A stretch of DNA of 64,000 nucleotides. Origin: Macrostomum hystrix (taxonomy: Eukaryota > Animalia > Platyhelminthes). The stretch is taken from contig CATNEN010000010.1 of the NCBI GenBank assembly GCA_950097015.1, positions 2,108,001 through 2,172,000 of the forward strand, read 5' to 3'. Every line of letters begins with the position of its first letter. The stretch's first letter is position 1. Under the pieces are notes generated by a model. The model ran no database searches, had not been told where the DNA came from, and saw only the letters and a list, made by a program, of their open reading frames with translations. Both the position numbers and the translations under genes were made by a program. This document shows, in pieces, positions 2,484 to 51,600 of this stretch.

Positions 2484-2484
2484 C

Positions 2485-3230: not shown

Positions 3231-3272
<42 letters not shown>
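3231..3272. repeat. (GCT)14 trinucleotide repeat just upstream of the ZnT start codon
   Basis: Direct reading. Confidence 0.95.

Positions 3273-3273
<1 letters not shown>

Positions 3274-9263: not shown

Positions 9264-9264
<1 letters not shown>

Positions 9265-9297
<33 letters not shown>
9265..9297. repeat. (AGC)11 trinucleotide repeat upstream of the DEG/ENaC gene
   Basis: Direct reading. Confidence 0.9.
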
Positions 9298-9452
9298 TAA
9301 TTAGTTGAAAGCTGTCGAAGTTTCAAGACGCTGCTCCCGCGGTCCTCATAAAAGTGGGATATAATCCCATAAGCCAAGGACAGGTCTCATTCCTCGGTTA
9401 TCCGAGAACTCCCTAATTTGACAACCAAAGATCCCAAATCGCCGCCACAGGC

Positions 9453-27600: not shown

Positions 27601-30600
27601 ATATTCTTATTCACAAAATTCACGTTTTGATCTGTAGAAATTTCACTTGAATGAATGTAAAGCACCGTTTAATACATCTATAGCGATATTTTAATTATGT
27701 TGAGAACATTTTATTTGGCAAGCATTTCGTATTGCAGAATCCTTCAGCAAAAAGCGTAAAATTTGTACATTTTTGTAGCTTAATGTCTGATAGGACTCGA
27801 GCTTATTTTGGGCGATACCACAAAAAAATTGTCTGCCACCTCGCTAACTCAAGAGACTGATATAAAACGATCGATGAAAATCAAAGTGAAATGAAGATTC
27901 TAACCGCAAAATTGCTTACGGCAAGTTATCACCAACTGTGCTTCACGCCCCCGAAAACTTCAGCGCAAGCAGCAGGGTGCAGCAAACACCGGCCTGAATG
28001 CGTACCGCAGCCACACGATCATCACTGCGCTGACCGAGCTGCGCGACTTCATGATTGTCAACAGCGAGCCGAACAAGAAGCGTCAGAAGCTCCTCAGGAA
28101 CCTGCGGGTGCGTGTTCGGCACCATGGAAATGCAGAACTCTTTAAGCGCATAAAACTCTGCTTATAATTTGGGGCAAATAGTTTGAGTGTACTTATTAGT
28201 TTAGGCTTTCACTCGCCAGCACGTGATCTCAGGATGATTGAAGAGGGTAAGCCCCTCTGGCTGTGAGGCTACATCAACAAGGTATCCACAGACCCTAAAG
28301 GCCACGAGACCCCTACCTGCATGGTTGGCTCAAATATTGCAGATCGTGGAGTTGCTGGTGCGGCTACTGCAGACGCCGTTTCGGGGTGCCACCGACCAGC
28401 AGTACCTGGTGAAGATCTTCGTTGAGTGCTACGAGGTCCTGTACACCTACCTGATGGGCGACTGTCGCAAGAATGAACTTTACATTGCGAAGCATATCGA
28501 CTTCTTTCGCAGCCAGATAATTCTGGAGGTGAGGCGTTCGTTGACAGATTTTCAACAAAACTATTCGTTTTTCTGACTGAGATGTAAAAATGACAATCAC
28601 GAACTGAAAAGCTCTCAACAATTTTCTCATACTGAGTCGGACTCATTTCTGATGAAATCGAGTCAAAATTAAGCCTAAGCCTAGTTCTCAGGCTTCTTCC
28701 AAAGTCATAGCCGGGAAAAAGGAGCATGAATTCAACATTGCGCATCGCATTTTATCTTTACAGACGTCAGCGGAATGCGTAAGTAGACTTGTCAGTGCGT
28801 GTGGTCGGTGGGAGGAGCATGAAAGTCTAACAAATTGCCTTACTTTTTGGCCTTTTCTTTTCTTTAATTCTCGAGCGACAAAAACTGGTCGACTTAAATT
28901 AAATAGAAGGATAGATTTTGAATTTTTTTAATAAATTAGCGATTAAACTCAGTAACAACTCAAGCACAGCTGAAATAATGTAGATAACTCGACAAACTCA
29001 AGGATAGAATAGAGACGCTGCCTCCGGCCCCAGTGTGCTCAATATATCAGCTTCTTTAGGCTGATGCTTTGTAGGCACTCAATTAGTGATTAACCAGGAC
29101 GGGTGACGTTGATGGTGGGCACTTGCATTTGTTCGCTGCCTCCATCTTCTTTATAAACGCATAAATGTGTGTAATCCTTACCAGTGTTGTGTTAGAGTAA
29201 CTAGCTCGTAGATATCTAACACCTGATAGTACTGATCGAATTAATCTTCGATAATCTATTAGCTCTGAGTATTATCGTAATATACTCAGAGCGGTCTTTG
29301 CTTACTTCATCGATCCATCTGTTAAAACTCCATCGACCAGGAGGAGGTGGGTCTTAACGCCGCTCACATGATCATGGAGCTCATCAAGGACAACCGGAAG
29401 ATTGTCGACCGAATTCCTACCAGCTACGTCGACGAGATCATCGAGCTTCTAAAGCAGAATCGAGTAGGAATCACTTAGACCCTTTCCTTATAAATTTTAA
29501 ATATAAATTCTGGTAAATAAGTACTTACTGATAAACCCTGATCACGTTGCAGAATTTTCGCTACCTTGAACTGCTCAGCGTTCTATGCGTATGCGATGGC
29601 TTGAGTATGCCGGAAAACCAGAACTACATCACGGAGAAGTGGTTGGTGCAAGGCAAAAATTTCTGCTTAGTTTTCTTTACTGATCTTGGCCAGGTGGTCG
29701 GCATGGAGAAGGACAAGGTGTTTGTGTCCGTTGACAACAAGAGGCACTGGGTTTCTCTTGCAAGTTTCGCTAAAGACGTACGTAAAATAAAATGATATTT
29801 TCGTTTGCCAATAGGATGCTTTAAGAGGGGAACAAAATAGGTAGCAGTTGTGTCTACAATAAATATAAAAGACAGGAATATTTAAGGAGATTTTCTAAGA
29901 AATTACTAAAGTGACAGGGGGCTGCGAACTTGGGTCGCACAGCCGCAATGTGACAACATGCTGGTATGATTGCGCGCTTGTACGTATTCGTGTGTGATCA
30001 GAGTCAGTGGGCAGAATGGCATCCCTAAATGTTGTTTGTAGCTCAGCAGTGCAAAATCAAAATGAAAACTTACAAGAGAAGCTAAAAAATGGAGTGCCTG
30101 CACGCCAAAAATGTCAAAATTGCAGTACCAGGCTGCCGTGGCCGCCTCCAAGTTGAACTCGGATGGCTCAGTGCAGCTTACGCACGTGCGGTCTCGGAAG
30201 AAGCATCGCAATCTGCGCAAGCTCAGTCCGGAGGAGGTAAGCACGTAATCGTCTAGGCCTGGAAATCTATTTATATTGTACTGTATATATACCGAGTTAC
30301 ACCAGAAAAGAATCATCAAATAAATAGCTATAAAGTAGAACGCTTCGACTCCACTTACGAGCTCGTAGTGAGAAGTTATTCCAAAATCTTGTAGATAGTG
30401 TCTAACTTGCGTTTGTAAACACTTTAACGCTAAGCGGTTTAAGCCCGAACGCTTTCGCATTTTTTTTCTGCTGCAATGTCCCGCAAATATTCATGCTTTT
30501 TATTTTTAACAAAAATAATTGACTTGCAGCAAAACTCAACGATAATAGAAGAATTCCTGTTTCTGCAGCATCAACTAGACCTCTTCGGTAAATTGTGTCA

Positions 30601-33600
30601 GGTAATATTTGTTGCTTGCCTGAATGGATTTTTTTTAAACGTGCCATTTTGCTCACTACAAACAAGACAAGTAAAAAACGCAGGGAAGGAACGCGAAGTC
30701 GATCGAGGTGATCACAAAGCGACTCAATTACCTCACCTGGGAGGAGGCCTTCATCTGTCTGACTGACGAGGAAATGCCGGACCAGCTGCGAGCCAAGTAC
30801 TGCGAGCTCATCACCACAATGTTTGTGGACGTTGACGACAACATCAGCGTGCTGGACAAGATCGACCTCACGTTTGTCTACGACGATATTTCCAAGGGCA
30901 ACAAGGAGCAACAGACAAAAGTAGTTGAGATGGTAAATCAGCCGAATTGTGCTTTTGACACTTCATGAGTGTTTAATTGAATGCAATTAAAGTTTTATTC
31001 TTACTGACTCTAGGGCATATTTACCCATTGAATCCCCGAAACCAACAGGAAACGGGCAGGAAGGCCTCAACTCAGAGGTACTTTCCGGCACTGCGAGACT
31101 GGTTGGAAGGCTTCCTGGACCAGAACCACGACATGACCGCCTCGGAGGTTGGGCACAATGTCCTCCTTGCCCACGTCATGCAGATGCTGCACTACTTGGT
31201 CAGGTTCGGTTACTACAACTCCAGCACCGACATCAAGAAGCTGCTGAAGCCGCTGCTGGAGCTAGCTTGACGGACGAAACGACAAGCCGCTGCCGAGAGG
31301 TGATTTTTGAACTGCTCAAGATCTCTCAGGCAGTGTACGCTGTGGGGCGGGGAATAGTAGCGACATAAAATAGAAAGCATTCAATTGCAGCGAATTCATG
31401 CCTGTATCTGCTCATTTCAGGCGTGTTGTCAAGCGAAATGGTGGCGAATGTTGCAGGATGTAATCAAAATCAATTTCTTGCGTCTCACATTATGCACTAT
31501 ACTGTTTGATCGAATACAGTTAGCACGCACTTTCCGCATAAAAACTATCCTCAATACTGACCTACGTTTGCGACTGTGGTAGACAATGTATTTTTTATTA
31601 TAATAATCTGAGTTGATTGTACGGAAAGTGATCCTAGGAGCAAAGGTAGGGTAAAGTTTAATTTAGCCCTAGTGGCTATTGCACTAAAGTGCAATCAGTG
31701 CAATGGTCGCTCACTTCTAAACTTCATCTGACTCTGGAATACAGGCCGCTCGTTCTGTGTGGCCTGGTCTTTACGAGTAGCAACTTAGTTTGTCCTGTGC
31801 TTTGGGCTTTCCAATTCCTAAATTTGAATAAAAATCGTCTGGTAGTTGTGTTTGTTGTTTGGTCAATCATTTTTTGTTGCAAGCGTATGTTAACACAGAA
31901 ACAATAACCGATCTTCTCTAATTTTAACCCTAACCAGCCGCATCATCGGACTATGAAAAGGTGCTGCAGCATTATCAAACCGTCGATCGATTCAAGCAGT
32001 CAAGAGAAACGAAGGCAGTTGTGGACGCTAAGTTTCAGTAAGGGATTCCTTACTGACTGGTACATGCTTGGTATACTTACTTGCTTTCAACTTACTTGGT
32101 ATATTGTCTAATAGCATTTCACTGCAATGTAATTTTCTGCAGAGCCATGCGCGTGCTGGACCTGTTCTTCAACTTCCGCTTCAATGTACGGCTGAAGCGA
32201 TTCGTGGCAGAGTTCAAGGATATTCACCGGGCGGCCCAGAGCACCAGCTCCACGAGCCAGGATGTACTGTCTGCGCTGCTCAGCGAGACTTATGAGCTCA
32301 ACGAGCAGTGAGTTCAAATATGGATTCCTGAATGACGGTTCTTGAGTATATGCCATTGTCTGATCCAACCTTAAGCATCACATCAATTACTATTTTATAT
32401 CCCAGTGTGGACTCCGTCGCTGGGCAACGCCTTTCGGACATGTTTGCTGAGTCCGCCTACTTCAGGAACTTCGACATTGTTGATGTCCTGCTGGTAAGAA
32501 GACTTTGAGTTGATTTGAGTAGTGTCCGTGCAAATTTAAACAGCCGGTATGTAACATGAGAACCAAAATCACGCGGACTTCAGGATCTGAGCCACTACGA
32601 GTACCCGAAGATGGTCCAGATGTCGATGTGGCTTCTGAACCGCTATTTCTCCGCATACAATTTGCTGTTCAAGCGAGCCGTGCTGGCCCAGGTGCTCATC
32701 ACTGATAGGTCCGTTGCAGTGCACAAGATGATCGAGGATGAGAGTCACGTGATGCACCGGATGATCGGCTCAAAGATGACCGACACGGACGTGGAGAAGA
32801 TGTGCTCAATTTTGTCTAAATTTTGCAAGTTAGTGAGAATCATCAGCATATGCAATTGATTAACATTATTTTCACCCTTCTTTTCATTTAATTTCAACTG
32901 AAATTCCGATTATAAACGGTTCAAAGAAATCCTCATGTCATACCTGCAGGGTCTGCCACCTGGACGACGAGCCTGAAGAGAGGCACCCAATGAACCAGGC
33001 CATTCTGTACAATAATGGAATATTAAACGATATTTTCGATTTGGTGTCTCAAGATGTGGATATTAACTTGCTGGTAAGATTCAAGTCCAGGTGGATACGG
33101 TCAGTCACGTGGCGTTTATAAAATTACTGGCGCCTCTAATAAAACAATTTTCAAGATGTTCCGTGAATCATCCAGGATGACAAAACGGGTACAAGCTCAT
33201 CACCGCATATCTGATTTGTTTATTCTGTTTCCTCCTTTTACAGTTGGCTAAAATTTAGTTAATAAACACAGTAGCCATTCATTCCTAAGAAAGCTTAAAG
33301 AAACTTAGACACCACTTTATATTTCATTTTCATTTCAAGTAGAGTACAGAAACGATGCACTGCAGAAAAAATAGAATAGTATTATTCGAGAAATTGTTTT
33401 ATTTGACTTATCAACTAAATAGCACGGTTTTCTCTAATAGATTACAATGGATTATCTCTACGCGCGAGTATATTCTAGCCACTGAACTGCAGGACGAGTA
33501 CAGCGGCCTCCGCCGAGTCTTTGCAAAGTGCTTCACCTTGTTGCGACTTATGGCTAGAGGCAACACCGTGGTGCAGAACCATTTGTTCGACCGGCTGGAT

Positions 33601-36600
33601 ACTCTGCTGAGCTGCGTTGGTGCCGAGTCCGAGCTGGCGTTGGCTCTAGCCGAGGTCTTCACTGGCAACAAGAACACCTGCATGAAGGTCCTGCCGCACC
33701 ACATAGCAAAGTCTATGTCTTTAATAGCGCAACACGGATCTAAAGCACCAGAATTTCTCGACATGCTAAACGCTCTGGTGAAGGTCGAGGAGCTGGATCT
33801 ACCACTGAAGCGCAACCAAGCCTACGTCATGAAGTACTTCATGCAGCAGAGAACCGAAGTGGCTCAGTGCCTCGACCAGAAGAAGGACGCCCAGCTGCGT
33901 TTGCTCAGGTCTGCCTCTCACTCGCCAGAGTCAGACTACATGATCGCTCTGGTCGACCTGCTGGCCACCTGCGCTGAGGGCGAGAACCGCTTCATCGAGT
34001 CTATCAACCAGACCATCTACCGAGTGAGCGACGTGCTGGTGATACTGACGGACCCCGCCATCCCGAACCACAACAAGCGGCCCTTCGCACGCTTCCTGCT
34101 GTGGGTCTACCTCAACACGGCCGGCGGCCTCATCGAGAGCGGCGCCGGCGACCTGCCGCACGATGGCAATATGTGGCAGCTGTTCGGCATGGTCAGGGAG
34201 GACCTGCGGCGCATGGCGGAGCTCGCGATGGAGAGCCCGCAGCTCGTCCGTCAGCTGATGAAAGTTCGAGTCTACAAGAAGTAAGTTGGCACACCTAAGT
34301 CGGCTTCCAAGTGTCAAACACAATGTCTAGTATGAAGTAGGAGCTTTTTGCAGGTTAATGGGGTTTGAGTTATTGTGCTGTGGTCGTCCTTTAGCAAATA
34401 CTTTGTGAATTGTTTTTAGATAAACCTTTAAATTTAAAACTGGGTGCTGGATCCATTAAAAGATAAACTAGATATAACATCACTGATTGCGTTGTCGTTA
34501 TGGACACAGAGTTATGGACACTAATCAATATTTTTAACAAACTCACTGATTGCGCCTTTTATATATACTCGTACTTTGCGGCGTATTTCATACTGTATTG
34601 CGCAGCACTCAACCAAATAATGATTTGTGCCACGATGCGTGAAATTTTCAGACCAAAGACTGCCTCTGCAAAGAGTGCAGATGAGCGAAGAAAAGTGGAA
34701 ACCCTGCCGCAAGTGTACGTTGACGATGAAGTGTAACTGCACATTTTTGACGCGCTAACATTTCATGAGGTTCATTGGTTTTGCATGAGTACGGCAAACT
34801 AATTTATTCGAGTTGGGGCTCACTCACTGCAGTGGTAAATGCTTAGTAACGGAAAAGATGCGAGTAGATTAGATAGACTAAGCGCCTAGCCCTTGTAAAC
34901 ATTTCAGAACCATTGAGGACTCTGGGAGTAGCCGAAAGCAGAATATTTCAGACGAGACCGTTCATGGCACGCTGAAGTTTCTGTTTGAAGGGGCTCTGCC
35001 AGTCATTAGTGTGAGTTTAACTTCATCGCTTTAAATTAGAATCTGTGCTAATGACTTGCAATGGAATCGGCTTAACTTCAGGTTTTCTTCAAGACTATTT
35101 TCCTGAAGGACTTGGAGGAACATCCCAAGGAAATTGACGAAATCAACAAGCTTGCACAAGCACTGATGGTGAGTGTTGCAGTTAAGTACTTTTTGTAGAA
35201 GCAATATTATGGAGACAAAAGTTATCACAGTTTCACCTTCTCAACTTGAAGACCTTCGTTGATGCCGTCATGCCTTTGGCATCTGATGAGAAGTACGTCA
35301 AGGCGCTCCTGGGCTGCACATCTTCCCTGCTAACTGTTAGCACCCTGCCTTCAAAGGTAAATGAGCTTGTATGTACGCTGACTGACAAGCATAAAAATGT
35401 ATTTTGCCCTATGCCCAATAAAAATAATTATAGACTATCGAAGATTTTCAAAGCAAGTACGGCTCAGGAATTCAGCTCAACTGGGATGCTCGAACTGAGG
35501 GCAGAAAGGTACGTCTATGGAATGAACAATGCACAAAGTTCGAGTTTTACATATCGGAAAGCAATTGTTTTCAGCGCTACGAGGAATACTACAACACGGA
35601 GGAAGAGCTGAACGTGCAGCTGAACGTGTTCGCCACCAACTTTAACATTTCCTACGGCGGCGAGAATACTCTCCGAGCCCAGATCGGCTTTCCAAGCGAC
35701 TTGGGTAAGCGCAGTAGGACTCTGGCACTACTGTACCAAAAGTACAAAATTAGCGAAAGTCCCAGTCGTTAGAGGCTCAGAGGCATGGTTTCGACTTTCA
35801 GCCAGGGAAGCAATTTGTGTCCTTCAGCAAGTTCTTCAGTTCCCTATTGCTTTCGTTCACCTAGCCGTAAAATGGTAACCAGCACCAGTTAGAAACGTCA
35901 GTGGGTGTGGCGGCCTCCGCAGACCACTGCACTGCACTATAGCTGCGGCTGTGGCACTGGTTGTACTGGGTAAGGTGTAAATTATGAATTCTTCAACTCG
36001 ACTAAAAATCTCCGCCATCAGACTACACTGTGATTGGCAGTGACGAAGAGCTGCCGCTGGGCAAGGAGTTTCAAAACCACATGGCCTGCTTCATCAACCC
36101 GGACCTGGGCGTATCGGATCCACTGAAGTTTAAATTGGCCGGCAAGCTGGTCGAGCAGCTGCAGTGAGTAGAAATGCCATTGCGGTAGAATAATAATAAT
36201 AATTGTAACACACTAAAAGTGGGGAACGAATCTCGCGCTGGCAGACCGAGACCGGTTTCTGGCTTGTTTGCCTTCGTCAGTCAGCCATAGCCACACGCAG
36301 TCCTCTCCCACCACTCTTAGTGTGCACAGAAGTCTCTTATAAGCTTGCCATTTTTATGGCGATACTTTTTTAAGTGTTATGTGAGAGTTTTGCAGCCAAG
36401 TCTTTGCTGTTCTACTGTTGTCAGTAGTCTTAATTTTATCTCTCACAATAATAATAATAATTGATTACACCTGGCCGAATTGGGTCAGATGTGCAGATGA
36501 TAGCACAGTCCATGGACTGGGGACGCCACACCCACCTTCAATTATCCCAGCAAATGCTGGTACCTAGCTGGGTGAACTAAAGCAATGCAGAGTTAAGTGT

Positions 36601-39600
36601 CTTGCTAAAGGACACAAATTTTTCCAGTGAAGTCAGGAATCGAATCCCCGACCCTTAAGTCGTGAGTCCGATGCCCTAACCACTAGGCTACCTCTTCTAC
36701 GGTAGAACTTAACCAATATCAGCCGAATCCTGCAGCTAGGGAAGATTATCAGTCCCGAGTTTGAGACAGCTGGTAGTCAATTCTGAGCTCACCTAAATCT
36801 TTGTTACACCTGCAGCATCTCGAACCAGATGGAGGTAACGAACGAAAAAGAGCGAATCGAACAGGAAATCCTGGATGTGAAGTGCCTGCAGCTCCTGCGA
36901 GCCATCATCCACAACGAGATCGTCAAGCTGCCTGACAACTTTGACAGCGCTGACACAAAAGAGTAAGCGTGTAGTGTCAATAACGCAATCGCATGCTCGA
37001 TATTTTTGCAGACTCATTGTAATTTGCTTAATATGGCAACCCTATGTCCATAACAATGCAACCTTATGAAAGTGGACAGCAGCATCAACTGCTTCGACGA
37101 TTAGTTTCCCTGTGATGATAGGTTAACCAAGGAAGAATATGAGAAGCAATGCGGGAAATTAATGAGGCATGCAAAAATATTTTAATCTAATTTTCTTCAG
37201 CATCATGGCCAAACTTACTGGTAAGTAGTGCAAGTTCCAGAAAGTTGGTTCTCTTGGGCTACATTGCGCACCATAGCGCTTCACTTGCTGCTCAGGAATA
37301 TTCGATTGACAAGCTGTAATACCAAGTGCTGAATTGCCTCGGTTTCAGGCTGACTCGAATGGGACAAAGTGATCTTGCCAGGTATTTACAAGATAATGTA
37401 CAGCTTCCGTTGCGAAAATGTTTCGTGCTTTTGCGTTAAACTACCCGCTTGAAGCATTTAATGCATGTGCTTAACGCGCTTTTTTCAGTTTAACATGAGT
37501 GCTTGATGTAGCTTGAAATTCATTTTTTATCAACGTTATGCATTTTGAGCATGGCTTGAGTCTCAAATTCAAATTTGAAGTGTTTTAGAGCGTCTACAGT
37601 CGTATACTCGTAAGTGTTACGAGTATTAGCTTGCTTTCCTCTGATTAATCTGGGCATTGCAGTTCCGTGTCAAAACACTAGCAGTTGTGTCACGGCCGTC
37701 TTCGGTCGTTAAAGGTTTTAATTTCTCGTAATTTCTATTTATTTCTAAAAATGACCTTTCATAACATAAAGGTTGTACTGGGTTACCCAGTTAAATACAT
37801 TTTATATTTATTAGTCAGTGGCTTGACAGCGTAACTTCTTACTTCTTTACAATCCAGACTCATTGAGGTGATCTCACAAGTCCAGAACTCGCTTAACAAG
37901 CACGACGCCATGCTAAAAGTGCTGCCACACCTGTCGAAACCGTCCGACGAGATCGTGCGAGAAGTACTGGGCTTCCTGGCCAACATGCTGTTCAACGGCA
38001 ACGAGGAGGTGCAGGGCAGCCTGATTGAGTATTTCTACGGCACGCGCGAGGAGAAGTTCTTCATGGCTGTTAAGAACCGCATCAGCTTATCGTCAATGGC
38101 CTGGAAGGAGAAGCAAGTACTACTCGACTGTTGGTTATAGGCTGGTGTAGCTATGAGAGTTGAAATTATTTTGGCACACAAATGATGGGGCTCAGTCTTT
38201 CTTGTGCCATTCTCAGCTACTGTCTTTTAATGCTGTTTAAATAAAAAATACAACTTCAATGATTGCCTTAGCAATAGGGTTATTCGATCCACTTTTACGT
38301 TTTCAGTCGAGCGCTAATAAGTCAGCATCAGGCAAAAATCGAGGAAGCCATCGCTGAAATGCGCGACCTCCAGCAGGCGATCAAGGAAGGCCGGGTCTCC
38401 GCAGAGGCGATGCAGGGCAGCAAGCTGGGCTCAATGTTGATGAGCATCCAGGCCAGCAGGACCAGCGTCGGTGGAAGCGCATCCAGAATGCGGGGCAGCA
38501 CTGCGGAATTGCGTCGGCGACTTCAACGAGCGGAGGGCTCCACGCCACAGATCCGCGGATCGCAGTCCAGCCTCCACGCAAATGGCGCTCAGACAAGCAC
38601 GGCAGCTGGCACAGGTGCCGGTGGATCGAAGGCCCTACTGGTCAAGGGTTCTCAGCCGCCCAACGGCCAGGCGGTCGGATTCCTGCCGGAAAATCGGGTC
38701 GCTCCCGTCCAGCAGAGCATTGTGGGAGCCGCATCAGCTATTGACGATGCTGAAATCGAGGAGTTGGCAATGAAGGTCGTGATGGAGAACGAGAATTTGC
38801 AGATGAAAGATGGTGGCTATATTGAGCTGGTGCTTCGAGTGCTTGCTTATATATGTGACGGACAGAACACTCAGCTGCAGGACTACCTTCGAGAGCAGCC
38901 CGACAACATTAAGTCAATCAATCTTGTGGCAGAAACAGCTCGCTTTCTAGGCCTAACCTACACGTCGATCAACAAAGCAAACATTTCACTGATCATCCAG
39001 ATTTTTGATACTTTGGTTGAATTCACGTCAGGCAACTTGAGCAATCAGGCGGTGTGCTTCGACAACAAAGTGTGCGACTATATGAACTATCTGTTGCGTT
39101 CCAAGCAGTCCTATGCAAAGTTCGGTCTTCAGGACGAAATGAGCATTAAAAGATCAATCGCCAATTTGATCATTGCGATGATTGAAGAAAATGTCAAGCG
39201 TGCAAAGGACCACGACCCGGCTGAGCTGCTGGGAAGCAACGGGCTGAGCGCCGCGCACATGGAGAATAAGCTGAAGGCAACTGCCGGAGTTGCCGACGAG
39301 GTGAAGGACACAATCGACGCGGAGAGCATTCGCAACGTGTTCTACGACTGCTACCGGCGCCACCTTGACGAAAGTCTGACGAAAGAGTCACGAGAGATGA
39401 TTATCACGGTGGGATTCAAATACTTTCTCATATTTCTGCGATTTCAGGACCTGGATAATCGAGAAACGATTAACTTCGAAAAGATGATAGAAAGAGATGT
39501 CGATGCAGAAGACCAGCAACTTGCGTGGGATTTCTATCAGTCCAACACCATGTCGATTGAGGTGCTAAAAGACGATAACCTGCAAAAGGTCTACTTCCGC

Positions 39601-42431
39601 GTCAAGGACAGAAAGGTTCTTCGAGAAGAAGTGAAGGAGCGCTTCAAATATGAAGTGGATCGGTAGGAAATTTATTTGTTTTTTCTTCATTTATTTAGCA
39701 TCTACAAAATACGAAGTGTAATCTGTAAGGGTGAAAATCAAACCTTAAAACGCACAACAGGACATCTCCGACGAACAAGCTGCGCGACTTCTCCGACTGG
39801 CTGCGAGAGATCATCAAGGACATCAAGTGGCAGAAGCGAGTGCTCAGCAATCCTCTGGGCTCATTCTTTGTGCACGGCTGGAAGGCCTTCAACATCCTGT
39901 GCATCATCCTGAGCCTGGCCATCAGCATCGTGGTGTTGGTCACTTGGACCAAGCCTGACGATAACAGCGATCCCGTGCCAGTTCGCACAGACGCGGCAAT
40001 CTATGCTACCTATGTGCTTGGCATTCTGCACAATATACTCAGCATGTTTGTACTAATTAGTTTCTTCCTGTGCAACAACCCATATGTGCCGAGTCCCCGT
40101 CAGATTCGCACTTTCTGGTCGTAAGTTAATCGTTTCATATTACGAGCTACTTGCTTATTAAAAATATAGCTCCCGCTTATGTTTTTGTTGTCTCTAATCC
40201 TTGCATAGGAAACTGATTGGGGTCACTCCAAAGGACGTCGAAGAGGACGTAGAAGAATCTGGTGGCAAGCTGCAGGTGTCCGTATTCAGCTTTAGCACAT
40301 TCTACTACCTGATCTTCTTGGGCTTCTCTATTCTGGGGACGGTCTTTTACGGCTACTTCTTCGCGTTTCACCTGCTGCACATTGCCAGGCACAACCAGCT
40401 GCTCACGCGAGTTATTCAGGCCGTTACAAAGAACGGTGAGTCAGTTCCGCTTTTATGTCATTTGATATTTAGTGCTAATATACTGTTTCGAAATATTTTG
40501 GTCTGAAATGTATTCCTACAAGAAACTGTTTTGTCAAACATTAGGCCTCTCGTTGCTGTGGGTTCTTATCTACTCCATGGCATTCTTCTTCATTTACGCA
40601 CTGCTGAGCTTTGCGTTTTATCGGAGCATATACGACAGCACGACAGGAAACTTCTGCGAGACCATGTACCAGTGCACGGTGACCGTCATTCACCGAGGCC
40701 TAATAGCTGGAATCTACGATGTGAGTCGCGCTTGTGAGAACTGGCGCTGCACTAAAGCCATTGTTTTTTTAATTAAGAATGGACTTCAAATCGTAACATC
40801 AACACGATCTCAGTAGAAGTACGAGCGTATCTTCGCCCTACGTTCTCAAGTATTTTAATGAACGGTTTAATGCCACACGCCTCATTTTAACCTTATGACA
40901 GGAAAATGTAAGTACCCCAAATGTTATAATGCATGCCACATATAAGCATGCACGGACGGTAATGTCAAAGTACCATAAAAATTACTCATTTCATTTCCTT
41001 GCTTTTCCACCTCGCAAGCAACACATCGCCTTTTGAAGAAATTACCACAGCACTCATTAGCCCGCTCCTTGCTCTTGCTCGAATTTTCTCAGTTTTTAGT
41101 CCTTTTTATAGCTGTTGTGGTGATTTTAGAGCCTTTCTGATGAACCTTTCTTCTGCATGAGTTTTTATCAGATGATTAATGTCCTCAAAGTGACATTTTT
41201 GTGAAAGAGCAAATTTAGCCCATGACAATTAGCTTGTCTTGCAAGTGATCGATTAAAGGATACTTTGATCTAATGTGAAATCATATTTATTGCAGTACCT
41301 TCCCGTGCCCAGCAATGAGTCGTTCACGTATCATGTTGTGAAAGGCATCTTCGACATTTCCTTCTTCATCATCATCACCACCATCGGCCTGAACATCATC
41401 TTCGGCATCATTGTCGACACATTCAGCGAGTTGAGGGACTCCAAATGGCAGATCGACCAGGACATGACCTCCGTGTGCTTCATCTGCTCCAGGAATGCCT
41501 ACGACTTTGAGCACCATGGAGAGGTAAGACACTCATTTGGATACTGCAAGCAGCGACCTGCCGTCTGCTCAATTCTGATGCCTCCAACCAAGAAGGTTCT
41601 ATCAGGCCAACATTGATCGTTCAACTTTATTTATTGCCAGGGATTCGAGAAGCATGTCAAGGAAGAGCACAACCAGTGGGCCTATCTGTTCTTCATTCTC
41701 TACCTGGACGAGACTCGATTCAATGACTACACAGCCATCGAACTGTTTGTCTGGCGACTGGTGAGCCGAACTCCCTCCCTAAATTTAGAGTTTGTGTTTG
41801 TGTTTGCTTGCCACGCAAAACTGCAGCAGCATGAGTTACATAAGAGCTTGACTCCAATAATAACAAAGGTGGCCTAACATGAGTTTCTCCAATCAACAAT
41901 CAGTTTTTTTGTTCATTCCTTCTCCAGTTTGAGAAGGAAAGACTGGACTACTTCCCGTTGAACAAGTCCATCACGCTGGAGGCGGCTGAGGACAACCGGG
42001 AGGAAGCCAAGCTCGAGACCCTTCTCAGCCAAGTGTCCTTCCTTGTTCGCAAGTGGAAAGAGGAGGTGAGTCACGTTTCAGTCTCAAAAAGCCAGGTGCT
42101 GTTAAGTTCCGGGCTTGCTGAATCGCTAATAAACCAGTTCAGTACTTTGGAAAGTGAGCAAGCGAATGCTAAATCGATCCCTTGTTTACAGGAGCTAGCC
42201 AAAGAGCGCGAGCGCGAGAAGCAGAGGCAGCAGAAGTGGGAGGAGCAGCACAAAAAGAGTGGCGACAAGGCCACTTTGGGCCGGCTGGTTCCGCCCCGGC
42301 CGATGACCGGCAAGCAGAAGACTGGACATGGCGAGTGCAGTGGTCGAGGCTGCCTTCAAATGACCCGCGAAGCCTCTGACTTAAAGTGGCTGCCTTTTGT
42401 GCCGACTGTTTTCATAATTGACGCCTCGTAA
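24683..42431 (+). CDS. ITPR: Inositol 1,4,5-trisphosphate receptor-like Ca2+ release channel, non-canonical lineage (copy A), about 2750 aa; one apparent +1 frameshift at 31264-31265
   Basis: Exons: 24683-24771, 24955-25025, 25103-25227, 25400-26182, 26649-26727, 26822-26910, 27069-27194, 27964-28107, 28343-28528, 28764-28778, 29341-29463, 29553-29777, 30126-30236, 30530-30601, 30684-30932, 31049-31299, 31421-31459, 31938-32037, 32143-32307, 32406-32493, 32584-32828, 32950-33073, 33493-34280, 34652-34714, 34908-35010, 35082-35168, 35252-35356, 35434-35508, 35575-35704, 36022-36163, 36816-36962, 37349-37381, 37858-38112, 38307-39662, 39761-40120, 40209-40435, 40545-40720, 40902-40907, 41296-41523, 41641-41760, 41928-42065, 42192-42431. 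Phases are continuous once the single extra base is removed. Motifs: [37 protein letters not shown]-associated LQDYLREQ, six TM segments, [18 protein letters not shown]2H2 CFIC...H...EH. The length of the C-terminal tail is less certain. Confidence 0.92.
28764..28778 (+). CDS. 15-nt in-frame microexon of ITPR-A (TSAEC)
   Basis: ttttatctttacag|ACGTCAGCGGAATGC|gtaagtagact; counterpart in copy B at 63720-63706 (KSADY) with the same gtaagtagact donor. Confidence 0.7.
35751..35990 (+). mobile_element. tRNA-derived SINE with a Meta/CORE-like central domain (degenerate copy) in an ITPR-A intron
   Basis: Degenerate B box (GTTTCGACT), core TTTGTGTCCTTCAGCAAG...ATTGCTTTCGTTCACCTAGC...GTGGGTGTGGCG, and AGGTGTAA before the tail, all shared with the copy at 36447-36698. 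Confidence 0.55.
36447..36698 (-). mobile_element. tRNA-derived SINE with a Meta/CORE-like central domain and (ATT)n tail in an ITPR-A intron
   Basis: Minus strand: A box GGTAGCCTAGTGGTTAGG, B box GGATTCGATTCC, core TTTGTGTCCTTTAGCAAGACACTTAACTC...GTTCACCCAGCT, 3' ATTATTATTATT. Confidence 0.7.
40902..40907 (+). CDS. 6-nt in-frame microexon of ITPR-A (EN), directly after the pore filter
   Basis: cattttaaccttatgacag|GAAAAT|gtaagt; 9-nt counterpart in copy B. Confidence 0.6.
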
Positions 42432-45626: not shown

Positions 45627-48600
45627 TCAATCGAATGGAACTTCCAGCTGCTGACTTTCTTCAGTGGGACGTGGCCGGACGACGATGCCGCTGCTGCCGC
45701 CAGCGCCAGCGCTACCACTGTCTCCGCTGCCGCTGCCACCGCCGTTACCGCCGTTACCGCCGCCGCCGTTCTTCTTGTGCTGCTCCTCCCACTGCTGCTG
45801 CCTCCTTTTCTCGCGCTCGCGTTCCTTAGCCAAGTCCTGAGTGAATGTCGTTGCGATTGAGGATGAAAGATAGGAATCTGCAGCTTAATTAGACTTGGTT
45901 TGCAACTAGTCGCACCTCTCTAAATCAAACCGAGTTCCTTAAATACACTTTAAAGACAAACTAGGAACACAGACGCTACGGGTTCTTGACAAACTCTGTT
46001 AGATATATCAGATTTATTTTAAATACACGCCTAAACGTTCAAAAGTTTTTTAAAGCATGCCTCGTTTAGAAACAAAAAAACTGATTCGATCAATAGAAAG
46101 AAAGTTTCACCCACCTCTTCTTTCCACTTGTGCACAAGAAACGAGACCTGCGTCATTAGCGTTTCCAGCTTCAGTTCCTCGTGGCTGTCCTCGGCTGCCT
46201 CCAGCGTGATGGACTTGTTCAGCGGGAAGAAGTCTAGCTTTTCCTTTTCGTACTGAATTAGGATTGGTCACGGTCGGTATGCGAATTGTAATGAAAAACG
46301 TTTGTCCTATCACTTCGCGATTTGATTCAGATTTGTATTTGCTGACAAGTTAGTGCGACCTACCAATCGAGACACATAGAGCTCAATTGCAGTGTAGTCA
46401 TTCTGTCCTAGTCTCGTCCAAGTACAGAATGAAAAACAGATAGGCCCACTGGTTATGTTCTTCCTTCACATGCTTCTCGAATCCCTGAAATTTATTATCT
46501 TGCTATAAAGTATCCTAACAGCATGTAGCCTAAATGTCGACCAAACCAAACTACATGAAATTTCCGTACCTCTCCATGGTGCTCAAAGTCGTAGGCATTC
46601 CTAGAGCAGATGAAGCACACGGAGGTCATGTCCTGGTCGATCTGCCATTTGGAGTCCCTCAACTCGCTGAATGTGTCGACAATGATGCCGAAGATGATGT
46701 TCAGGCCGATGGTGGTGATGATGATGAAGAAGGAGATGTCAAACACCGATTTGGCCAGGTGATAGTCGAATGTTTTATTAGCTGGCACAGGTAGGTACTG
46801 GAATGAGAGTTGTTATGAATCATGAATGACATGTCACATGCAACCACTTTGCACTTTTTTACCGTGTTGTGCAGAAACAAAGGAGAAGCGCACGACAACA
46901 GAAACAAGTAAAAAATATATTGAAGTGCCGAAGAACATAACAGGGGGATTGTGAACCAGTTAAGGCAAACACCACAGAGGAAATAAAATACAAATCTGAA
47001 GATAAAATACAACAGTAAAGCTCTGGTGGATGCCTTTTTAATCCTTTCCAATACTTACATCTGCCTCCTGCGATTAAAAATAAAATTAGAGAATTATTTA
47101 TTTAAAACGTAATCTCACTGATAAATATGAAAATATGCTTTTCTCGCAGAGCATCACAAAGATCAAGTCTTACATCATAGATTCCTGCAATGAGGCCTCG
47201 ATGAATGACCGTGACGGTGCACTGGTACATTGTCTCGCAGAAGTTTCCAGTAGAAGAATCGTAGATTTCTCGGTAGAATGCGAAACTGAGCAGCGCATAG
47301 ATGTAGAAGAAGGCCAGCGAGTAGATGAGGACCCACAGCAGCGACAGACCTGAATGTAGCGACACATATTCAGTAGCAGCTCAGCAAGTACTGTATGAAG
47401 CAGCATAATATACGAGGCTATGAAACTGCCAGCCTATCGGGAGGAGCTAGTTTTCAGCGCAATTGTCTGTCAAAGTCTCACCATTCTTAGTGACAGCTTG
47501 AATGACCCTAGCCAACAACTGGTTGTGATTGGCGATGTGCAGCAGGTGGAATGCGAAGAAGTAGCCGTAGAACACGGTGCCCAGCACTGACAGCAGCAGG
47601 AAGGAGATGTAGTAAAACGTGCTGAAACTGAACACGGACGCTTGCAGCTTTCCTTCAGCGTTGTCTTCATCATCCGTGGATGTTTTGGCACCGACTCCTA
47701 TCAACTTTCTGCAAGCATGGAAGGAAGAAAGCGGAAAGGGATAAAAAATTGAGAAAGCTCGATGAAAGCATACAATGCAAAATGGGATCAAGTTGGTGTG
47801 GTCACTTACGCCCAGAACGTGCGAATCTGCTGCATACTTGGAAAATACGGATGATTGCAGAGAAAGAAGCTGATCAGTATGAAGAGGCTGAGTATGTTGT
47901 GCAGAATTCCCAGCACATAGGTGGCATAGACGGCGCCATCGGCTCGAACTGGCACAGGATCGCTGACTGTTTCTGGGATGTTCCAACTACTCAGCACGAC
48001 GATGCTGATGGCCAGGCTCAGGATGATGCACAGGATGTTGAAGGCCTTCCAGCCGTGAACAAAGAATGAGCCCAGAGGATTGCTGAGCACTCGCTTCTGC
48101 CACTTAATGTCCTTGATGATTTCGCGCAGCCAATCAGTGAAGTCACGCAGCTTGTTCGTAGGAGACGTCCTGTTAAAGTACATGTCTTATGCTCTAATTC
48201 GATTGTTTTTAAAGGACATCTAAACACGAAAGTCCTGAAACAATTTAATCATCAATTTATGAATAAATATTCTATTGCGAGAAAGGATCGTTCTCTTACC
48301 TGTCAACTTCGTATTTAAACCTATCCTTGACTTCTTCTCGAAGCACCTTCTTGTCCTTAACTCGAAAGTACACTTTCTGCAGATTGTTGTCCTTCAGGAT
48401 TTCAATGGACATTGTGTTAAACAGGTAGAAGTCAAAAATAAGGCGCTGCTCGTCAGCGTCAGCGTCCTTCTCAATCATCATCTCAAAATTGATGTTCTTT
48501 TTGTGATCGAGGTCTTGAAAGCGCAGGAAGATGTGAAAGTACTTGAACCCGACAGTTATAATAGTCTCTCTCATGTCCTTGTCGAGATCTGTATCCAAAT

Positions 48601-51600
48601 GTCGTCGATAGCAGTCCATGAAAACATTCAGAATGCTCTCCGCGTCGATGGTGTCCTTGACTTCATCAGCAACCCCGGCAATCGCCTTGAGGCGCTTCTC
48701 GGCCTGCGAAGTGCCAGCAGTGGAGCCTCCCGACTGATCAGTAGCGTCGTGCTCAGAGTCTCGCTTCACATTCTCTTCGATCATGGCGACGATAAGGTTT
48801 GCGATAGATCTTTTCATGTCCATCTCTTCCTGCAGACCGCACTTGGAGTAGGACTGTTTGGATCGCAGCAGGTAGTTGATGTAGTCGCACACTTTGTTGT
48901 CATAGCAGACAGCCTGGTTGCTGAGGTTGCCAGATGAGAACTCGACGAGCGAGTCAAAGATCTGAATTATGAGCGAGATGCTTGACTTATTGATCGACGT
49001 GTAGGTGAGGCCAAGGAAGCGGGCTGTCTCAGCGATCAGGTTGACAGACTTGATGTTATCTGGCTGCTCTCTCAGGTAGTCCTGCAAGCGAGTGTTTTGC
49101 CCATCGCAGACGTATGCAAGCACTCGCAGCACAAGCTCAATGTAGCCGTCGTCCTTCATCTGCATATTCTCGTCCTCCATCACAATTCTTGTCGCCAGCT
49201 CCTCAATGTCGCCCTCGTCGATGTTTGAAGCGATAGTCTCAGCAGGCCCAACTCGGTTCCCCGAACGACTTGGTTCCCCCTGACCCATGTGCTGCATCTC
49301 AGTCGCGTCACTCCGAATCAGTTGCCGAGTAGAGTCGTTAGAACCTGGTCCATTTCTTTCGCCCGTATAGCCACGGTTGTACATTCCACCGCCGCCCAGG
49401 TCATGGAGGTTGCTTCGTGAGGACCGAAGTTGAGCAGCGGATCCTTGAAGACGATTCTGCTTGCGCCGCAGCTCCGCTGTGCTTCCCTGAACATACTGCC
49501 GACTACCGCGCACCCGGGCCCCACTCCCGGATACGCTGCCTTTGCTGGCCTTCAAGTTGAGCAACATGGAGCCCAGTTTGCTGCTCTGCATAGCCTCGGC
49601 AGAGACTCGGCCTTCTTTCATCGCCTGCTGAAGATCTCGAAGCTCCGCGATTGCCTCTTCAATTTTTGCCTGGTGCTGACTGATGAGTGCTCGGCTGTTG
49701 GAGGATAATAGTAAAAGTATTTTTACTTCGGAGCACTTAGCCAGCAAGTTTGAAAGCAACTAACGAGAATCGAGAATCGCTATGGAAATACGCTTACTTT
49801 TCTTTCCAAGCCATTGACGACATGCTGATGCGATTCTTCACAGCCACGAAGAACTTCTCCTCGCGTGTGCCATAGAAGTAGTCTAGCAGGCTGCCCTGCA
49901 CCTCCTCGTTGCCGTTGAACAGCATGTTGGCCAGGAAACTCAGCACCTCTCGAACAATCTCGTCAGACTGTTTGGATAAGTGCGGAAGTACTTTAAGCAT
50001 GGCATCGTGCTTGTTGAGCGCCGTCTGCACGCGGGCGATCGCCTCGAGTCGTCTGGAAGCGCCGTTCAGAAGGTTTTATGTTTCGCTTAAACATTTTTTA
50101 CGGAGCTTTCCATCGAAGGCTCGACTAGGGTCACATTTTAGAGAGACTATGCTCTCAAAGAAAATTTAAACAACAGTTATTGGCGAAAAATACCACAGTA
50201 CTCGTACATGCGATCACTTTAAGTAAAAATAACTACATTCAATTAGATTAAAAATCTGAAAACGAAAACTTGTTATACATATGTATCATGCTGTGAAATT
50301 TGCTATGTAGTTTCACAGTATTGATAAACGTGAAATCAGACAAAGAAACGTAATGACTAAGACTTGAATATACAATCTCATCGAAAATATGGTTTTAAGA
50401 AATCTATTCTTCAGCTAAACGGAAAGCCTGATGTGCTGAAAAATGTTCACAAGAGCCACCGCTCACTGATTGAATCGGTGAAAGTTTTCAATTTTGCTAG
50501 AATTAAACTTCACATGAGTGATAAGTGATTAGTCTGCACTTCTCTATCTATTTGCAGGGGGGCCCGGGGCACTTGTCGCACAAGTGACGGAGCGGCACGC
50601 CCCCAGACCGGCGAACTAGGCGCTTAGCGCCCATCGCGCCGCCTCCCCTGAGCAGGCACCACACAGCAGCACAGAGGCACCCAGAATAGGCGGCAGTGCC
50701 CCCACCCCAGCCCCACACGCACAGAGCAGACTAAGCCTGATAAGAAATCAGTCCTCAGGGGGGCCGGGTGATGAGTGTACACTTATCCAATCGCGGCAGT
50801 GCCCCCCACCCCAGCCCCACACGCACAGAGCAGACTAAGCCTGATAAGAAATCAGTCCTCAGGGGGGCCGGGTGATGAGTGTACACTTATCCAATCGCGC
50901 TGACGGAAATCCAGAAAGCGCGCGGCGGTGTACACCCTCCCCCAGCCACCCCCCGCAAGGCCTCACGCCCCAGCGCCAACGCACACAACTCACTCAACGC
51001 AGAACAGGCACACAGAGGGAAGGAGCGAAGCTATTATTTCAAGCTTTGATTGCACGAAATTTGGTGCACCTCCGCCGGTCGCTACTGTCCAAACCCTCCA
51101 ACAAGTCCCGAAATTAATAGTGACTTAAGGGAGAATCGAAATAGCGTCCATTGGAGTGCGAGGCAGCGACGCTAGCCGCTGACCCACTCGCCCCTTTTAG
51201 TCTGCACTTCAAAATTTGATCGAATTTTACTAAGTAATGAAATCGCAGGTAAATATTAGAATTACGAGTAGAAAAATATGTAATCGGTAATATTCTTTGA
51301 AAGATACTAGTATCAGACAGCTACAAGTGAACACGTAGATTTTTTATGCGTTTGGCTAATCACGAAATGCGTGACTAATTTTTACCTGGACCAGGTTTTC
51401 TTTCCACGACCAATCATTCTGAAACAGTTGTTGCCCAAGGTGTCAGTAGTGTGCAAGCTAGCTACCTTACAGAAATGTGAATTCTCAAGTGCAGGACCAC
51501 CTGGAAAATTGCGAAGAAGAGAAATGCAAAGCAGAAACTCACTCCTTGAAGTCCACGGAGTCAAAGTTTGTTGGCAGCTTGACAATCTCGTTGTGCATGA

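What the first reader, a model, noticed from the sequence alone, without database searches (positions are those of the whole stretch)
40691..40720. Non-canonical selectivity filter: GLIAGIYD instead of GLRxGGG[VI]GD
Seen: both copies encode [22 protein letters not shown] (A 40691-40720; B 47203-47174) with synonymous differences, so the motif is conserved rather than decayed. The luminal loop after TM5 is also very short. Known: canonical IP3R and RyR filters are GGGVGD/GGGIGD. Inference: a two-residue shorter loop with Gly replaced by Tyr should change pore geometry, so ion selectivity or conductance may differ from classical Ca2+ release channels.
Basis: partly seen in the sequence, partly recalled or inferred. 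Interest (0 to 1): 0.7.

Follow-up and report, generated by a model that had tools for sequence, protein, structure and literature searches.

The report
Flatworm IP3R-B channels, glycine-poor pore
Two neighbouring flatworm genes encode calcium-release-channel relatives whose pore lacks the usual triple-glycine filter; this is real and present in the mRNA of copy A, but it is the normal signature of an old, barely studied invertebrate branch of the family, and tiny conserved exons may lengthen the filter.

Summary
Both copies encode [22 protein letters not shown] at the stated places. The copies differ there by 9 synonymous and 0 amino-acid changes, and dN/dS for the pore exon is 0.018. Spliced transcript contigs from four runs join 40720 directly to 41296. 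The copy A mRNA therefore reads GLIAGIYD|YLPVP, with no GGG motif anywhere in the pore loop.

The motif is not a one-off. The genes sit in a well-supported third clade, apart from canonical IP3R and from RyR-like rows. This matches the IP3R-B subfamily of the literature. Within it, a clade of 43 animal sequences (placozoan, amphioxus, acorn worms, lophotrochozoans) all carry an 8-residue, GGG-free filter. Macrostomum lignano orthologs carry the identical motif.

The Ca2+-sensor residues, the S6 gate, the zinc finger and the inner acidic ring are kept. An altered cation channel is therefore likelier than a dead pore, but this is untested.

One result goes beyond the finding. The intron after the filter holds 6- and 9-nt micro-exons (E-N; E-A-D). 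They are conserved in M. lignano, so the missing two residues may be a splicing option.

This scan reached the same family-level conclusion before, on other DNA of this genome (s1-363646, s1-313516).

The parts
25102..42360 (+). Gene copy A, essentially full length (about 2,500 aa): IP3R-type channel of the IP3R-B clade
   Evidence: tblastn with the Patella protein P0001 covers its residues 52-2565. Pfam finds Ins145_P3_rec, MIR, RIH (twice), RIH_assoc and Ion_trans. The 3' half is spliced as modelled in RNA contigs. The stop at 42358-42360 applies after removing the extra base at 42322/3, which the RNA contigs lack.
25424..26200 (+). N-terminal exon (suppressor / beta-trefoil part of the ligand-binding region)
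   Evidence: Pfam Ins145_P3_rec 3.6e-17 and MIR 4e-10. It aligns to IP3R1 residues 101-318. R265 is kept, while T266, T267, G268 and R269 are replaced by V, R, A and V.
38307..39661 (+). Exon with the RIH_assoc domain and both Ca2+-sensor glutamates
   Evidence: Pfam RIH_assoc 7e-22. The alignment to IP3R3 keeps E of LVEF (opposite LTEY) and E of AMIEE (opposite ALMES). The exon borders come from RNA joints.
40544..40720 (+). Copy A pore exon: S5, short luminal loop, pore helix and filter
   Evidence: RNA joints 40434>40544 and 40720>41296. Translation.
40697..40720 (+). Filter motif GLIAGIYD (copy A), the subject of the finding
   Evidence: It aligns to [10 protein letters not shown] of IP3R2 through the family profile.
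40902..40907 (+). Candidate cassette micro-exon GAAAAT (E-N), flanked by ag| and |gtaagt
   Evidence: The same hexamer with splice sites sits in the orthologous M. lignano intron, which is otherwise unalignable. None of 200,000 shuffles reproduces it. It is skipped in the RNA contigs available.
41296..41523 (+). Copy A S6 exon: luminal linker, S6 with gate residues, start of the zinc finger
   Evidence: phmmer hits RyR1-3 and IP3R1-3 at about 1e-10. Pfam Ion_trans. RNA joints.
41641..41759 (+). C-terminal-domain exon (His pair of the zinc finger; NDYT with the Ca2+-site threonine)
   Evidence: Loose ends and joints; translation; profile alignment.
41927..42063 (+). C-terminal-domain exon (coiled-coil part)
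   Evidence: RNA joints 41759>41927 and 42063>42190.
42190..42360 (+). Last coding exon of copy A
   Evidence: RNA contigs. With the base at 42322/3 left out, the tail reads ...SAVVEAAFK*, like M. lignano P0197 and P0198.
45627..63005 (-). Gene copy B, tail to tail with A; its N-terminal quarter lies beyond the window end
   Evidence: blastn of A against B gives exons 75-95% identical and diverged introns. tblastn with P0001 and P0194.
47174..47349 (-). Copy B pore exon; GLIAGIYD at 47197-47174
   Evidence: Its splicing was not checked with reads, because the reads call was used on copy A.
47059..47067 (-). Candidate cassette micro-exon GAGGCAGAT (E-A-D) of copy B
   Evidence: The M. lignano ortholog intron has ag|GAGGGCGAT|gtaagt at nearly the same offset. 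Only 2 of 200,000 shuffles reproduce it.
46570..46797 (-). Copy B S6 exon
   Evidence: Its translation matches copy A except in the luminal linker.
46381..46484 (-). Copy B C-terminal-domain exon with one extra base (near 46403-46406) that shifts the frame
   Evidence: This is either an assembly error or a real lesion; it cannot be decided here.

Best explanation
The window holds two tail-to-tail paralogous genes of a Macrostomum flatworm. They encode about 2,500-residue channels with the IP3R architecture. The genes belong to the third, invertebrate-retained branch of the IP3R/RyR superfamily, called IP3R-B in the literature, and within it to one of two lophotrochozoan subclades. GLIAGIYD is their genuine pore filter and is under strong purifying selection.

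Shown here: copy A is transcribed and spliced so that the filter is followed directly by YLPVP and then S6. The placozoan-plus-bilaterian part of the clade has replaced the 10-residue GL(L/R)xGGG(L/I/V)G(D/E) by an 8-residue G-L-(I/V)-x-(G/D/S)-(I/L/M/P)-aromatic-(D/E/N/T) motif. Sponge and choanoflagellate members still have GGGLGE.

Inferred: the protein still forms a tetrameric cation channel of internal membranes that Ca2+ co-activates. The grounds are that several elements are kept: the pore helix; the hydrophobic and acidic filter positions (I, D); the S6 gate ([12 protein letters not shown]); the inner acidic ring (D, E, D of [11 protein letters not shown]); the C2H2 zinc finger; and the three Ca2+-sensor residues. 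Its filter geometry, and so its conductance and Ca2+/monovalent selectivity, should differ from canonical IP3R and RyR. Whether IP3 opens it is open, because about half of the IP3-contact residues are changed.

Also inferred: conserved 6-nt (A) and 9-nt (B) micro-exons in the next intron give a second isoform. This isoform would add E-N or E-A-D at the luminal mouth of the pore.
For: Motif and selection. mRNA structure. Architecture.

Relatives: the best representative is a Patella protein at 43% identity, and no row whose pore or source name I checked among the best 150 was a canonical animal IP3R or RyR (names for 30 rows). M. lignano P0194, P0197 and P0198 carry the identical 22-residue motif and lie in the same gene layout.

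Trees: a careful tree gives the 43-row animal clade 100/99 support, the subclade holding the window genes 100/100, and the Macrostomum cluster 100/100. With canonical IP3R and RyR-like rows added, the family is a separate clade of 56 rows at 100 (quick tree).

Motif census: 153 relatives, of which 16 have GGG; none of the 43 rows of the animal clade does.

Alignment to solved channels. Model of the M. lignano ortholog: pLDDT 82.7; pore helix, short turn at I-Y-D, 9-residue loop, S6; best fold matches IP3R3, RyR2 and RyR1 at E about 1e-18. Micro-exons. Residues encoded in-line at the same spot in relatives.
Against: No functional data exist for any member with this filter. In canonical IP3Rs, single substitutions of filter glycines give dead pores (IP3R2 G2498S; IP3R1 G2506R/A; PMC7939385). 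Conduction through a glycine-poor filter is therefore an inference from conservation, not a demonstration.

The model is a monomer, so pore geometry was not obtained. Inclusion of the micro-exon was not seen in any transcript: four runs' contigs and the M. lignano gene models skip it. Copy B carries a frameshift as assembled, and its expression was not checked. The mapping of this clade to the name IP3R-B rests on taxon distribution and on one accession check, because the defining paper could not be read here.
Confidence: 0.7

Rival explanations
1. The proteins are non-conducting. The glycine-poor filter would be a natural dead pore, and the proteins would act as Ca2+ or ligand sensors, scaffolds, or modulatory subunits rather than as release channels.
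For: Single glycine substitutions in the canonical GGGXG motif abolish IP3R function (PMC7939385, read). The leech paper states that the physiology of the IP3RB family is undetermined (PMC7992859). From my own memory of Alzayady et al. 2015, which I could not read here, Capsaspora IP3R-B did not bind IP3 or release Ca2+ in response to it.
Against: Pore-lining and gating elements that matter only for conduction are nearly invariant across the clade: the pore helix cysteines, [12 protein letters not shown], and the D/E/D ring. The filter itself is under strong purifying selection (dN/dS 0.018). The GLIGD(L/M)F(D/E) version is almost unchanged across molluscs, annelids, nemerteans, a brachiopod and flatworms. 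A dead pore would not be expected to keep these features for several hundred million years.
Confidence: 0.15
2. The filter is a lineage-specific remodelling of a canonical IP3R in this genome, which is the implicit reading of the first stage. It would then be a private novelty of these two copies.
For: The exact string GLIAGIYD was found only in the window and in three M. lignano proteins.
Against: The same 8-residue, GGG-free design occurs in all 43 placed animal members, from Trichoplax and amphioxus to molluscs. The genes are separated from canonical IP3R by long, fully supported branches.
Confidence: 0.03
3. The motif is an artefact: a decaying pseudogene pair, or an exon-border misreading in which the true filter continues in a missed exon in every transcript.
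For: Copy B has a frameshift as assembled. Conserved micro-exons do exist in the intron.
Against: Copy A is expressed and correctly spliced in four runs, with the direct 40720>41296 joint and an open frame. There are 0 non-synonymous against 9 synonymous differences in the motif. The assembly also has single extra bases, relative to RNA, in copy A at 42322/3 and 42439, so the copy B frameshift may be an assembly error.
Confidence: 0.03

Closest known systems
IP3R-B subfamily of the IP3R/RyR superfamily (Alzayady et al. 2015, Mol Biol Evol 32:2236; leech ip3rb1/2 in PMC7992859)
   Same: It is a third clade beside IP3R-A and RyR. It is present in Lottia, Capitella, Saccoglossus and amphioxus, and absent from vertebrate rows. 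The architecture is IP3R-like and about 2,500 aa long. The nearest Capsaspora protein is XP_004347257.1, which is not the IP3R-A accession XP_004347577.1 (PMC9522344).
   Different: Nothing defining differs. Searches of the held library and the four papers I read said nothing about the pore filter of this subfamily. I could not read the defining paper.
Macrostomum lignano hypothetical proteins BOX15_Mlig001198g2, Mlig016571g1 and Mlig001696g3 (P0198, P0197, P0194)
   Same: They have the identical 22-residue pore helix and filter. They are 90-93% identical to the window genes over about 700 columns. The tail-to-tail layout on contig NIVC01003111.1 is the same, and so are the micro-exon islands.
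   Different: Exons are only 84-88% identical in DNA and the introns cannot be aligned, so the window comes from another Macrostomum lineage or a deep homeolog. M. lignano has an extra tandem copy of the A type.
Canonical IP3 receptors (ITPR1-3, IP3R-A)
   Same: The domain order, pore helix (C-x5-C), S6 gate F/I, zinc finger and Ca2+-sensor E/E/T are shared. The family profile hits IP3R2 at 1e-52, and the fold match has E about 1e-18.
   Different: There is no GGGxGD. The filter is two residues shorter in the transcript seen. The S5-pore loop is about 10 residues instead of the long glycosylated loop. Five of the eleven IP3-contact residues checked are replaced non-conservatively and one more conservatively (R504 to K). 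The clade is separate.
Ryanodine receptors
   Same: The S5-pore loop is short. The S6 exon scores as well against RyR as against IP3R (1e-10). The inner acidic ring is the same.
   Different: The protein is half the size. No SPRY, RyR-repeat or EF-hand domain was found in the full-length Patella relative or in the exons scanned. There is no GGGIGD, and the clade is separate.

Membership tests
IP3R/RyR superfamily | N-terminal Ins145_P3_rec and MIR, then RIH domains, RIH_assoc, and a C-terminal 6-TM Ion_trans pore with a C2H2 zinc finger | tested here: met
   Pfam on copy A exons finds all of them. S6 and the zinc finger align to RyR and IP3R chains. The fold match is to IP3R3, RyR1 and RyR2.
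Canonical IP3R (IP3R-A / ITPR) | Selectivity filter GGGxGD after the pore helix | tested here: not met
   The mRNA reads GLIAGIYD|YLPVP, with no GGG in the pore or S6 exon.
Canonical IP3R (IP3R-A / ITPR) | IP3-contact residues of the binding core (IP3R1 R265, T266, T267, G268, R269, R504, K508, R511, Y567, R568, K569) | tested here: inconclusive
   R265, K508, R511, R568 and K569 are kept, and R504 becomes K. T266, T267, G268, R269 and Y567 are replaced by V, R, A, V and C. The alignment near R265-R269 has a gap nearby.
Canonical IP3R (IP3R-A / ITPR) | Groups with vertebrate and arthropod IP3Rs in a tree | tested here: not met
   IP3R-A rows form their own clade (support 100, branch 1.41). The window genes lie in a separate 56-row clade (support 100, branch 1.21). 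This is the quick tree.
Ryanodine receptor | About 5,000 aa with SPRY and RyR repeats and an EF-hand pair; filter GGGIGD; groups with RyRs | tested here: not met
   The gene encodes about 2,500 aa. No such Pfam domain occurs in P0001 or in the exons scanned. The RyR-like rows are a separate long-branched clade. Not every exon of copy A was scanned.
IP3R-B subfamily | Third clade, distinct from IP3R-A and RyR, holding non-vertebrate animal and unicellular holozoan members | tested here: met
   The members include Lottia, Capitella, Saccoglossus, Branchiostoma, Trichoplax, sponges, Salpingoeca, and Capsaspora XP_004347257.1, which is not the published IP3R-A accession (PMC9522344, PMC7992859).
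IP3R-B subfamily | Identity of this clade with the one named IP3R-B by Alzayady et al. 2015 (their accession list) | not testable with these tools
   The paper is not held. The leech paper's supplements list no accessions.

The most novel reading that the evidence does not exclude
Alternative splicing of conserved 6- to 9-nt micro-exons placed exactly at the end of the selectivity filter switches these channels between two forms. One is a short, single-acid filter (GLIAGIYD|YLPVP). The other is a longer, more acidic one ([10 protein letters not shown]- or -EAD-YLPVP), and in copy A it has the canonical loop length. This would be a splice-tunable pore in an IP3R/RyR-type channel. More broadly, placozoan and bilaterian IP3R-B channels would conduct through a filter built without the GGG motif, which is held to be indispensable in this superfamily.
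Probability: 0.35. Interest if true: 0.8.

Novelty: new member of a known kind. Interest (0 to 1): 0.5.

Why it matters
IP3R and RyR pores are taught as GGGxGD filters, in which single glycine changes cause disease and dead channels. Here a whole ancient animal branch of the same superfamily has done without that motif under strong purifying selection. The branch is present from placozoans to amphioxus and, according to the leech paper (PMC7992859), was lost in vertebrates, flies and nematodes. Its permeation, ligand and physiology are unknown. The only expression clue in the literature I could read is leech touch neurons.

The flatworm genes give a compact test case. There are two paralogs with an identical filter, a tractable model genus, and micro-exons that may change charge and length at the pore mouth. 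Expressing the short and long forms in IP3R-null cells would directly test which parts of the canonical filter are needed for Ca2+ release.

Tried and rejected
- phmmer of the 57-aa pore exon alone against PDB sequences found nothing. A family profile was needed.
- The defining IP3R-B paper could not be read by DOI or PMC id. A PMC id guessed from memory was a different paper.
- The leech paper's supplements hold no accession numbers to tie my rows to its tree.
- The parasite-channel paper covers only canonical GGGXGD homologues.
- Literature searches for a description of the IP3R-B filter found none.
- I first read the micro-exon candidates as chance. The RNA contigs skip the one in copy A. 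Their conservation in M. lignano made me reverse that reading.
- A search for Macrostomum protein fragments carrying the micro-exon found none. It did find a TARA metagenome scaffold with Q-D encoded in-line.
- The genomic loci of the Owenia and Lineus proteins, wanted to test whether their extra residues are micro-exons, are not on record.
The M. lignano ortholog with the identical pore was therefore folded as a monomer.
Full report
**What is at the coordinates.** Window 40691-40720 (+) encodes [10 protein letters not shown]. With the preceding codons it reads [22 protein letters not shown]. Copy B on the minus strand (47203-47174) encodes the same peptide. The sequence is eukaryotic: the codon for the final Asp is followed by gtgagt in A and gtaagact in B. 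Over the 22 codons the two copies differ at 9 of 66 bases, all synonymous. Over the whole 57-codon pore exon, Nei-Gojobori dN/dS is 0.018, and for the S6 exon it is 0.185.

**The mRNA.** Four public runs of one study hold 62-63% of the sampled words of 38300-42300, which is about the exonic share. Their contigs, laid on 38000-42600, are spliced. The joints are 38112>38307 (a GC-AG intron), 39661>39760, 40120>40209, 40434>40544, 40720>41296, 41759>41927 and 42063>42190. Loose ends show 41523>41641. The 715-nt contig has letters 446-622 on 40544-40720 and its remaining 93 letters on 41296 onward, so nothing is inserted between them. Joining these exons gives one open frame...[22 protein letters not shown]|[48 protein letters not shown]....

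**The genes.** Copy A spans about 25102-42360. It matches a 2,567-aa Patella protein over residues 52-2565. Its exons carry Ins145_P3_rec and MIR, two RIH regions, RIH_assoc and Ion_trans. Copy B lies tail to tail (63005 down to about 45627), and its N-terminal quarter is beyond the window. Exons are 75-95% identical between the copies, and the introns have diverged.

The S6 exon hits RyR1-3 and IP3R1-3 equally, at about 1e-10. The N-terminal exon prefers IP3R1 (72 bits) over RyR2 (53 bits). The RIH_assoc exon hits only IP3Rs, and weakly.

**Relatives and the filter.** An exhaustive search with the 451-aa RIH_assoc exon gave 587 hits. The best was Patella caerulea at 43% identity. No row whose pore region or source name I checked among the best 150 was a canonical animal IP3R or RyR (names for 30 rows). 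A word search with the Patella channel domain gave 135 proteins. They come from molluscs, annelids, nemerteans, brachiopods, Macrostomum lignano, hemichordates, Trichoplax, sponges and Capsaspora.

I read the pore of every relative. Of 153 with a recognisable pore, 16 have GGG. Those I could place or name are a choanoflagellate type (GLLSGGGLGE), the sponge Oscarella, and unnamed environmental sequences. The others carry an 8-residue motif of two main types:
- G(L/F)(I/V/S)x(G/S)(I/M/P)Y(D/N/T/S): molluscs, Lineus, Dimorphilus, Owenia, Lingula (the last two with F for Y), and the window genes.
- GLIGD(L/M)F(D/E): a second lophotrochozoan set that includes another M. lignano gene.

Hemichordates have GLIDGLQE, amphioxus GLMENLHK, and Trichoplax GFLSGFHE. 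Three M. lignano proteins (P0194, P0197, P0198) carry exactly [27 protein letters not shown].

**Trees.** A careful maximum-likelihood tree (57 rows, 721 columns) gives the following clades:
- Trichoplax, amphioxus, hemichordates and 36 lophotrochozoan rows: a 43-row clade with 100/99 support, none with GGG.
- Two lophotrochozoan subclades, each 100/100.
- The window genes inside one of them. Copy B is sister to M. lignano P0194 (93% identity). Copy A is sister to P0197 plus P0198 (90%).

I then added partial canonical IP3Rs (fish, frog, hamster, insects, crustaceans; all GLR(S/N)GGG(V/I)GD) and two RyR-like rows (EF-hands, RR_TM4-6, GGGIAD), found. The family remains a separate 56-row clade (support 100, stem length 1.21). 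It is distinct from IP3R-A (support 100, stem 1.41) and from the RyR-like pair. This is a quick tree.

The result matches the three types (IP3RA, IP3RB, RyR) that the leech paper reports for the bilaterian ancestor. That paper says IP3RB was lost in vertebrates, Drosophila and C. elegans, and calls it understudied (PMC7992859). The Capsaspora member is XP_004347257.1, not the IP3R-A accession XP_004347577.1 listed in PMC9522344. I could not read Alzayady et al. 2015, so the name is assigned by distribution and topology.

**Alignment to solved channels.** A profile of 44 pore regions hits IP3R2 at 1e-52 and RyR1 at 3e-47. It lays [24 protein letters not shown] on the family's C-x5-C pore helix and G-L start. 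One residue of IP3R2 is printed as an insert state (lower-case g) before the acidic position. After the acid, the L-P of YLPVP matches the ALP of GGG-bearing members. GLIAGIY therefore stands against GLLSGGGLG, two residues short. Ile takes the place of the canonical V/I, Tyr the place of the last glycine, and Asp is kept.

The following elements are conserved:
- the S6 gate ([12 protein letters not shown] opposite LNLIFGVIIDTF);
- the D/E/D ring;
- C-F-I-C...H-x4-H;
- the threonine of NDYT;
- both Ca2+-sensor glutamates, LVEF opposite LTEY and AMIEE opposite ALMES.

Of the eleven IP3-contact residues, R265, K508, R511, R568 and K569 are kept and R504 becomes K. T266, T267, G268, R269 and Y567 are changed.

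An AlphaFold2 monomer of the M. lignano ortholog's channel domain was built with 44 sequences. It has pLDDT 82.7. It shows a pore helix running through G-L-I, a coil at A-G, one turn at I-Y-D, a nine-residue loop and then S6, with confidence of about 79-89 over this stretch. Foldseek's best matches are IP3R3, RyR2 and RyR1 at about 1e-18. A monomer cannot give pore radius.

**How it probably works.** Everything needed for a Ca2+-co-activated tetrameric cation channel is retained, and the filter is under tight constraint. I therefore read it as a working channel with a differently built filter. That filter has one acidic ring (Asp) and an aromatic ring beside it, where canonical channels have glycine carbonyls.

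The main rival is a non-conducting protein. Its support is that single glycine changes kill canonical pores: IP3R2 G2498S, and IP3R1 G2506R/A (PMC7939385). I give it 0.15, because conduction-specific elements would not be expected to stay invariant in a dead pore. The ligand is open.

**Micro-exons.** The intron after the filter contains ag|GAAAAT|gtaagt in copy A (40902-40907; E-N) and ag|GAGGCAGAT|gtaagt in copy B (47067-47059; E-A-D). I fetched the M. lignano locus, contig NIVC01003111.1, with genes P0197(+), P0198(+) and P0194(-) in the same tail-to-tail layout. Its exons are 84-88% identical to the window and its introns do not align. Yet the orthologous introns hold ag|GAAAAT|gtgagt and ag|GAGGGCGAT|gtaagt at similar offsets, as islands in unconserved sequence. 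Mononucleotide shuffles of the M. lignano introns reproduce these in 0 and 2 of 200,000 trials.

Relatives encode two residues at exactly this spot within the exon. A TARA metagenome scaffold has one genomic ORF reading GLFD-QD-YVPLP. The Owenia protein reads GIFD-ED-YMTSP. Several nemertean and mollusc proteins have longer insertions at the same point.

These are therefore very probably real cassette exons. Inclusion would restore the canonical 10-residue length in copy A and add negative charge at the luminal mouth. Inclusion has not been observed: the four runs' contigs and the M. lignano gene models skip them, and contigs drop minor isoforms.

**Standing of the finding.** Two earlier follow-ups of this scan, on other pieces of the same genome, reached the same family-level conclusion for the GLIGD-type paralogs (s1-363646, s1-313516). 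I tested that conclusion independently here. Nearly identical proteins are already in public databases as hypothetical proteins. I rate the genes as new members of a known kind. Two things go beyond that: the lack of any description of this filter in the literature I could search, and the conserved micro-exons at the pore mouth.

**Caveats.**
- Copy B has one extra base near 46403-46406, which gives a stop after LDETRTE.
- The assembly also has single extra bases, relative to RNA, at 42322/3 and 42439 in copy A. Leaving out the first restores a conserved ...EAAFK* end. An assembly error is therefore as likely as a lesion.
- The 70-row tree is a quick tree. RyR is represented by two environmental fragments.

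Noticed in passing
window 40902-40907 (+) and 47059-47067 (-); L001 introns at about 17349-17826 and 22176-22596: Micro-exons of 6 and 9 nt (E-N; E-A-D) with splice sites lie directly after the filter exon. They are conserved in both M. lignano orthologs, although the introns otherwise do not align. They are skipped in the RNA contigs seen.
   Followed up: yes
window 46381-46484 (-), extra base near 46403-46406: The copy B C-terminal-domain exon has one base more than copy A and M. lignano P0194. This gives a stop after LDETRTE and would remove the last ~120-130 residues. It may be an assembly error or a real lesion.
   Followed up: partly
window 42322-42323 and 42439 (+): The genome has single extra bases relative to the transcript contigs of all four runs. 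Without the first, copy A ends ...SAVVEAAFK*, like the M. lignano proteins. The assembly therefore carries small indel errors or strain differences.
   Followed up: partly
window 38113-38306 (+): This is a GC-AG intron, used in the contigs of all four runs.
   Followed up: no
window 357-18036; also 52520-52765, 54260-54865, 60736-61187: There are very large tandem arrays upstream of copy A: a 21-mer in 126 copies at 15418-18036, a 22-mer in 107 copies at 6224-8680, and a 19-mer in 60 copies at 3596-4740. I did not test for a link.
   Followed up: no
L002 (TARA metagenome scaffold, 2,234 bp), 1374-1850: An unidentified marine relative encodes S5, pore helix, filter (GMIVGLFD), Q-D and S6 in one uninterrupted genomic ORF. 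It lacks the two introns that flank the pore exon in Macrostomum.
   Followed up: partly
P0294 (M. lignano UniRef A0A1I8JAV8); P0238, P0210, P0250, P0261: Some database proteins read on past the filter into extra sequence at the same intron position. Examples are M. lignano P0294 and Lineus, Tubulanus and Liolophura proteins with 8-20 extra residues. These are either annotation read-through or further alternative exons at the pore mouth.
   Followed up: no
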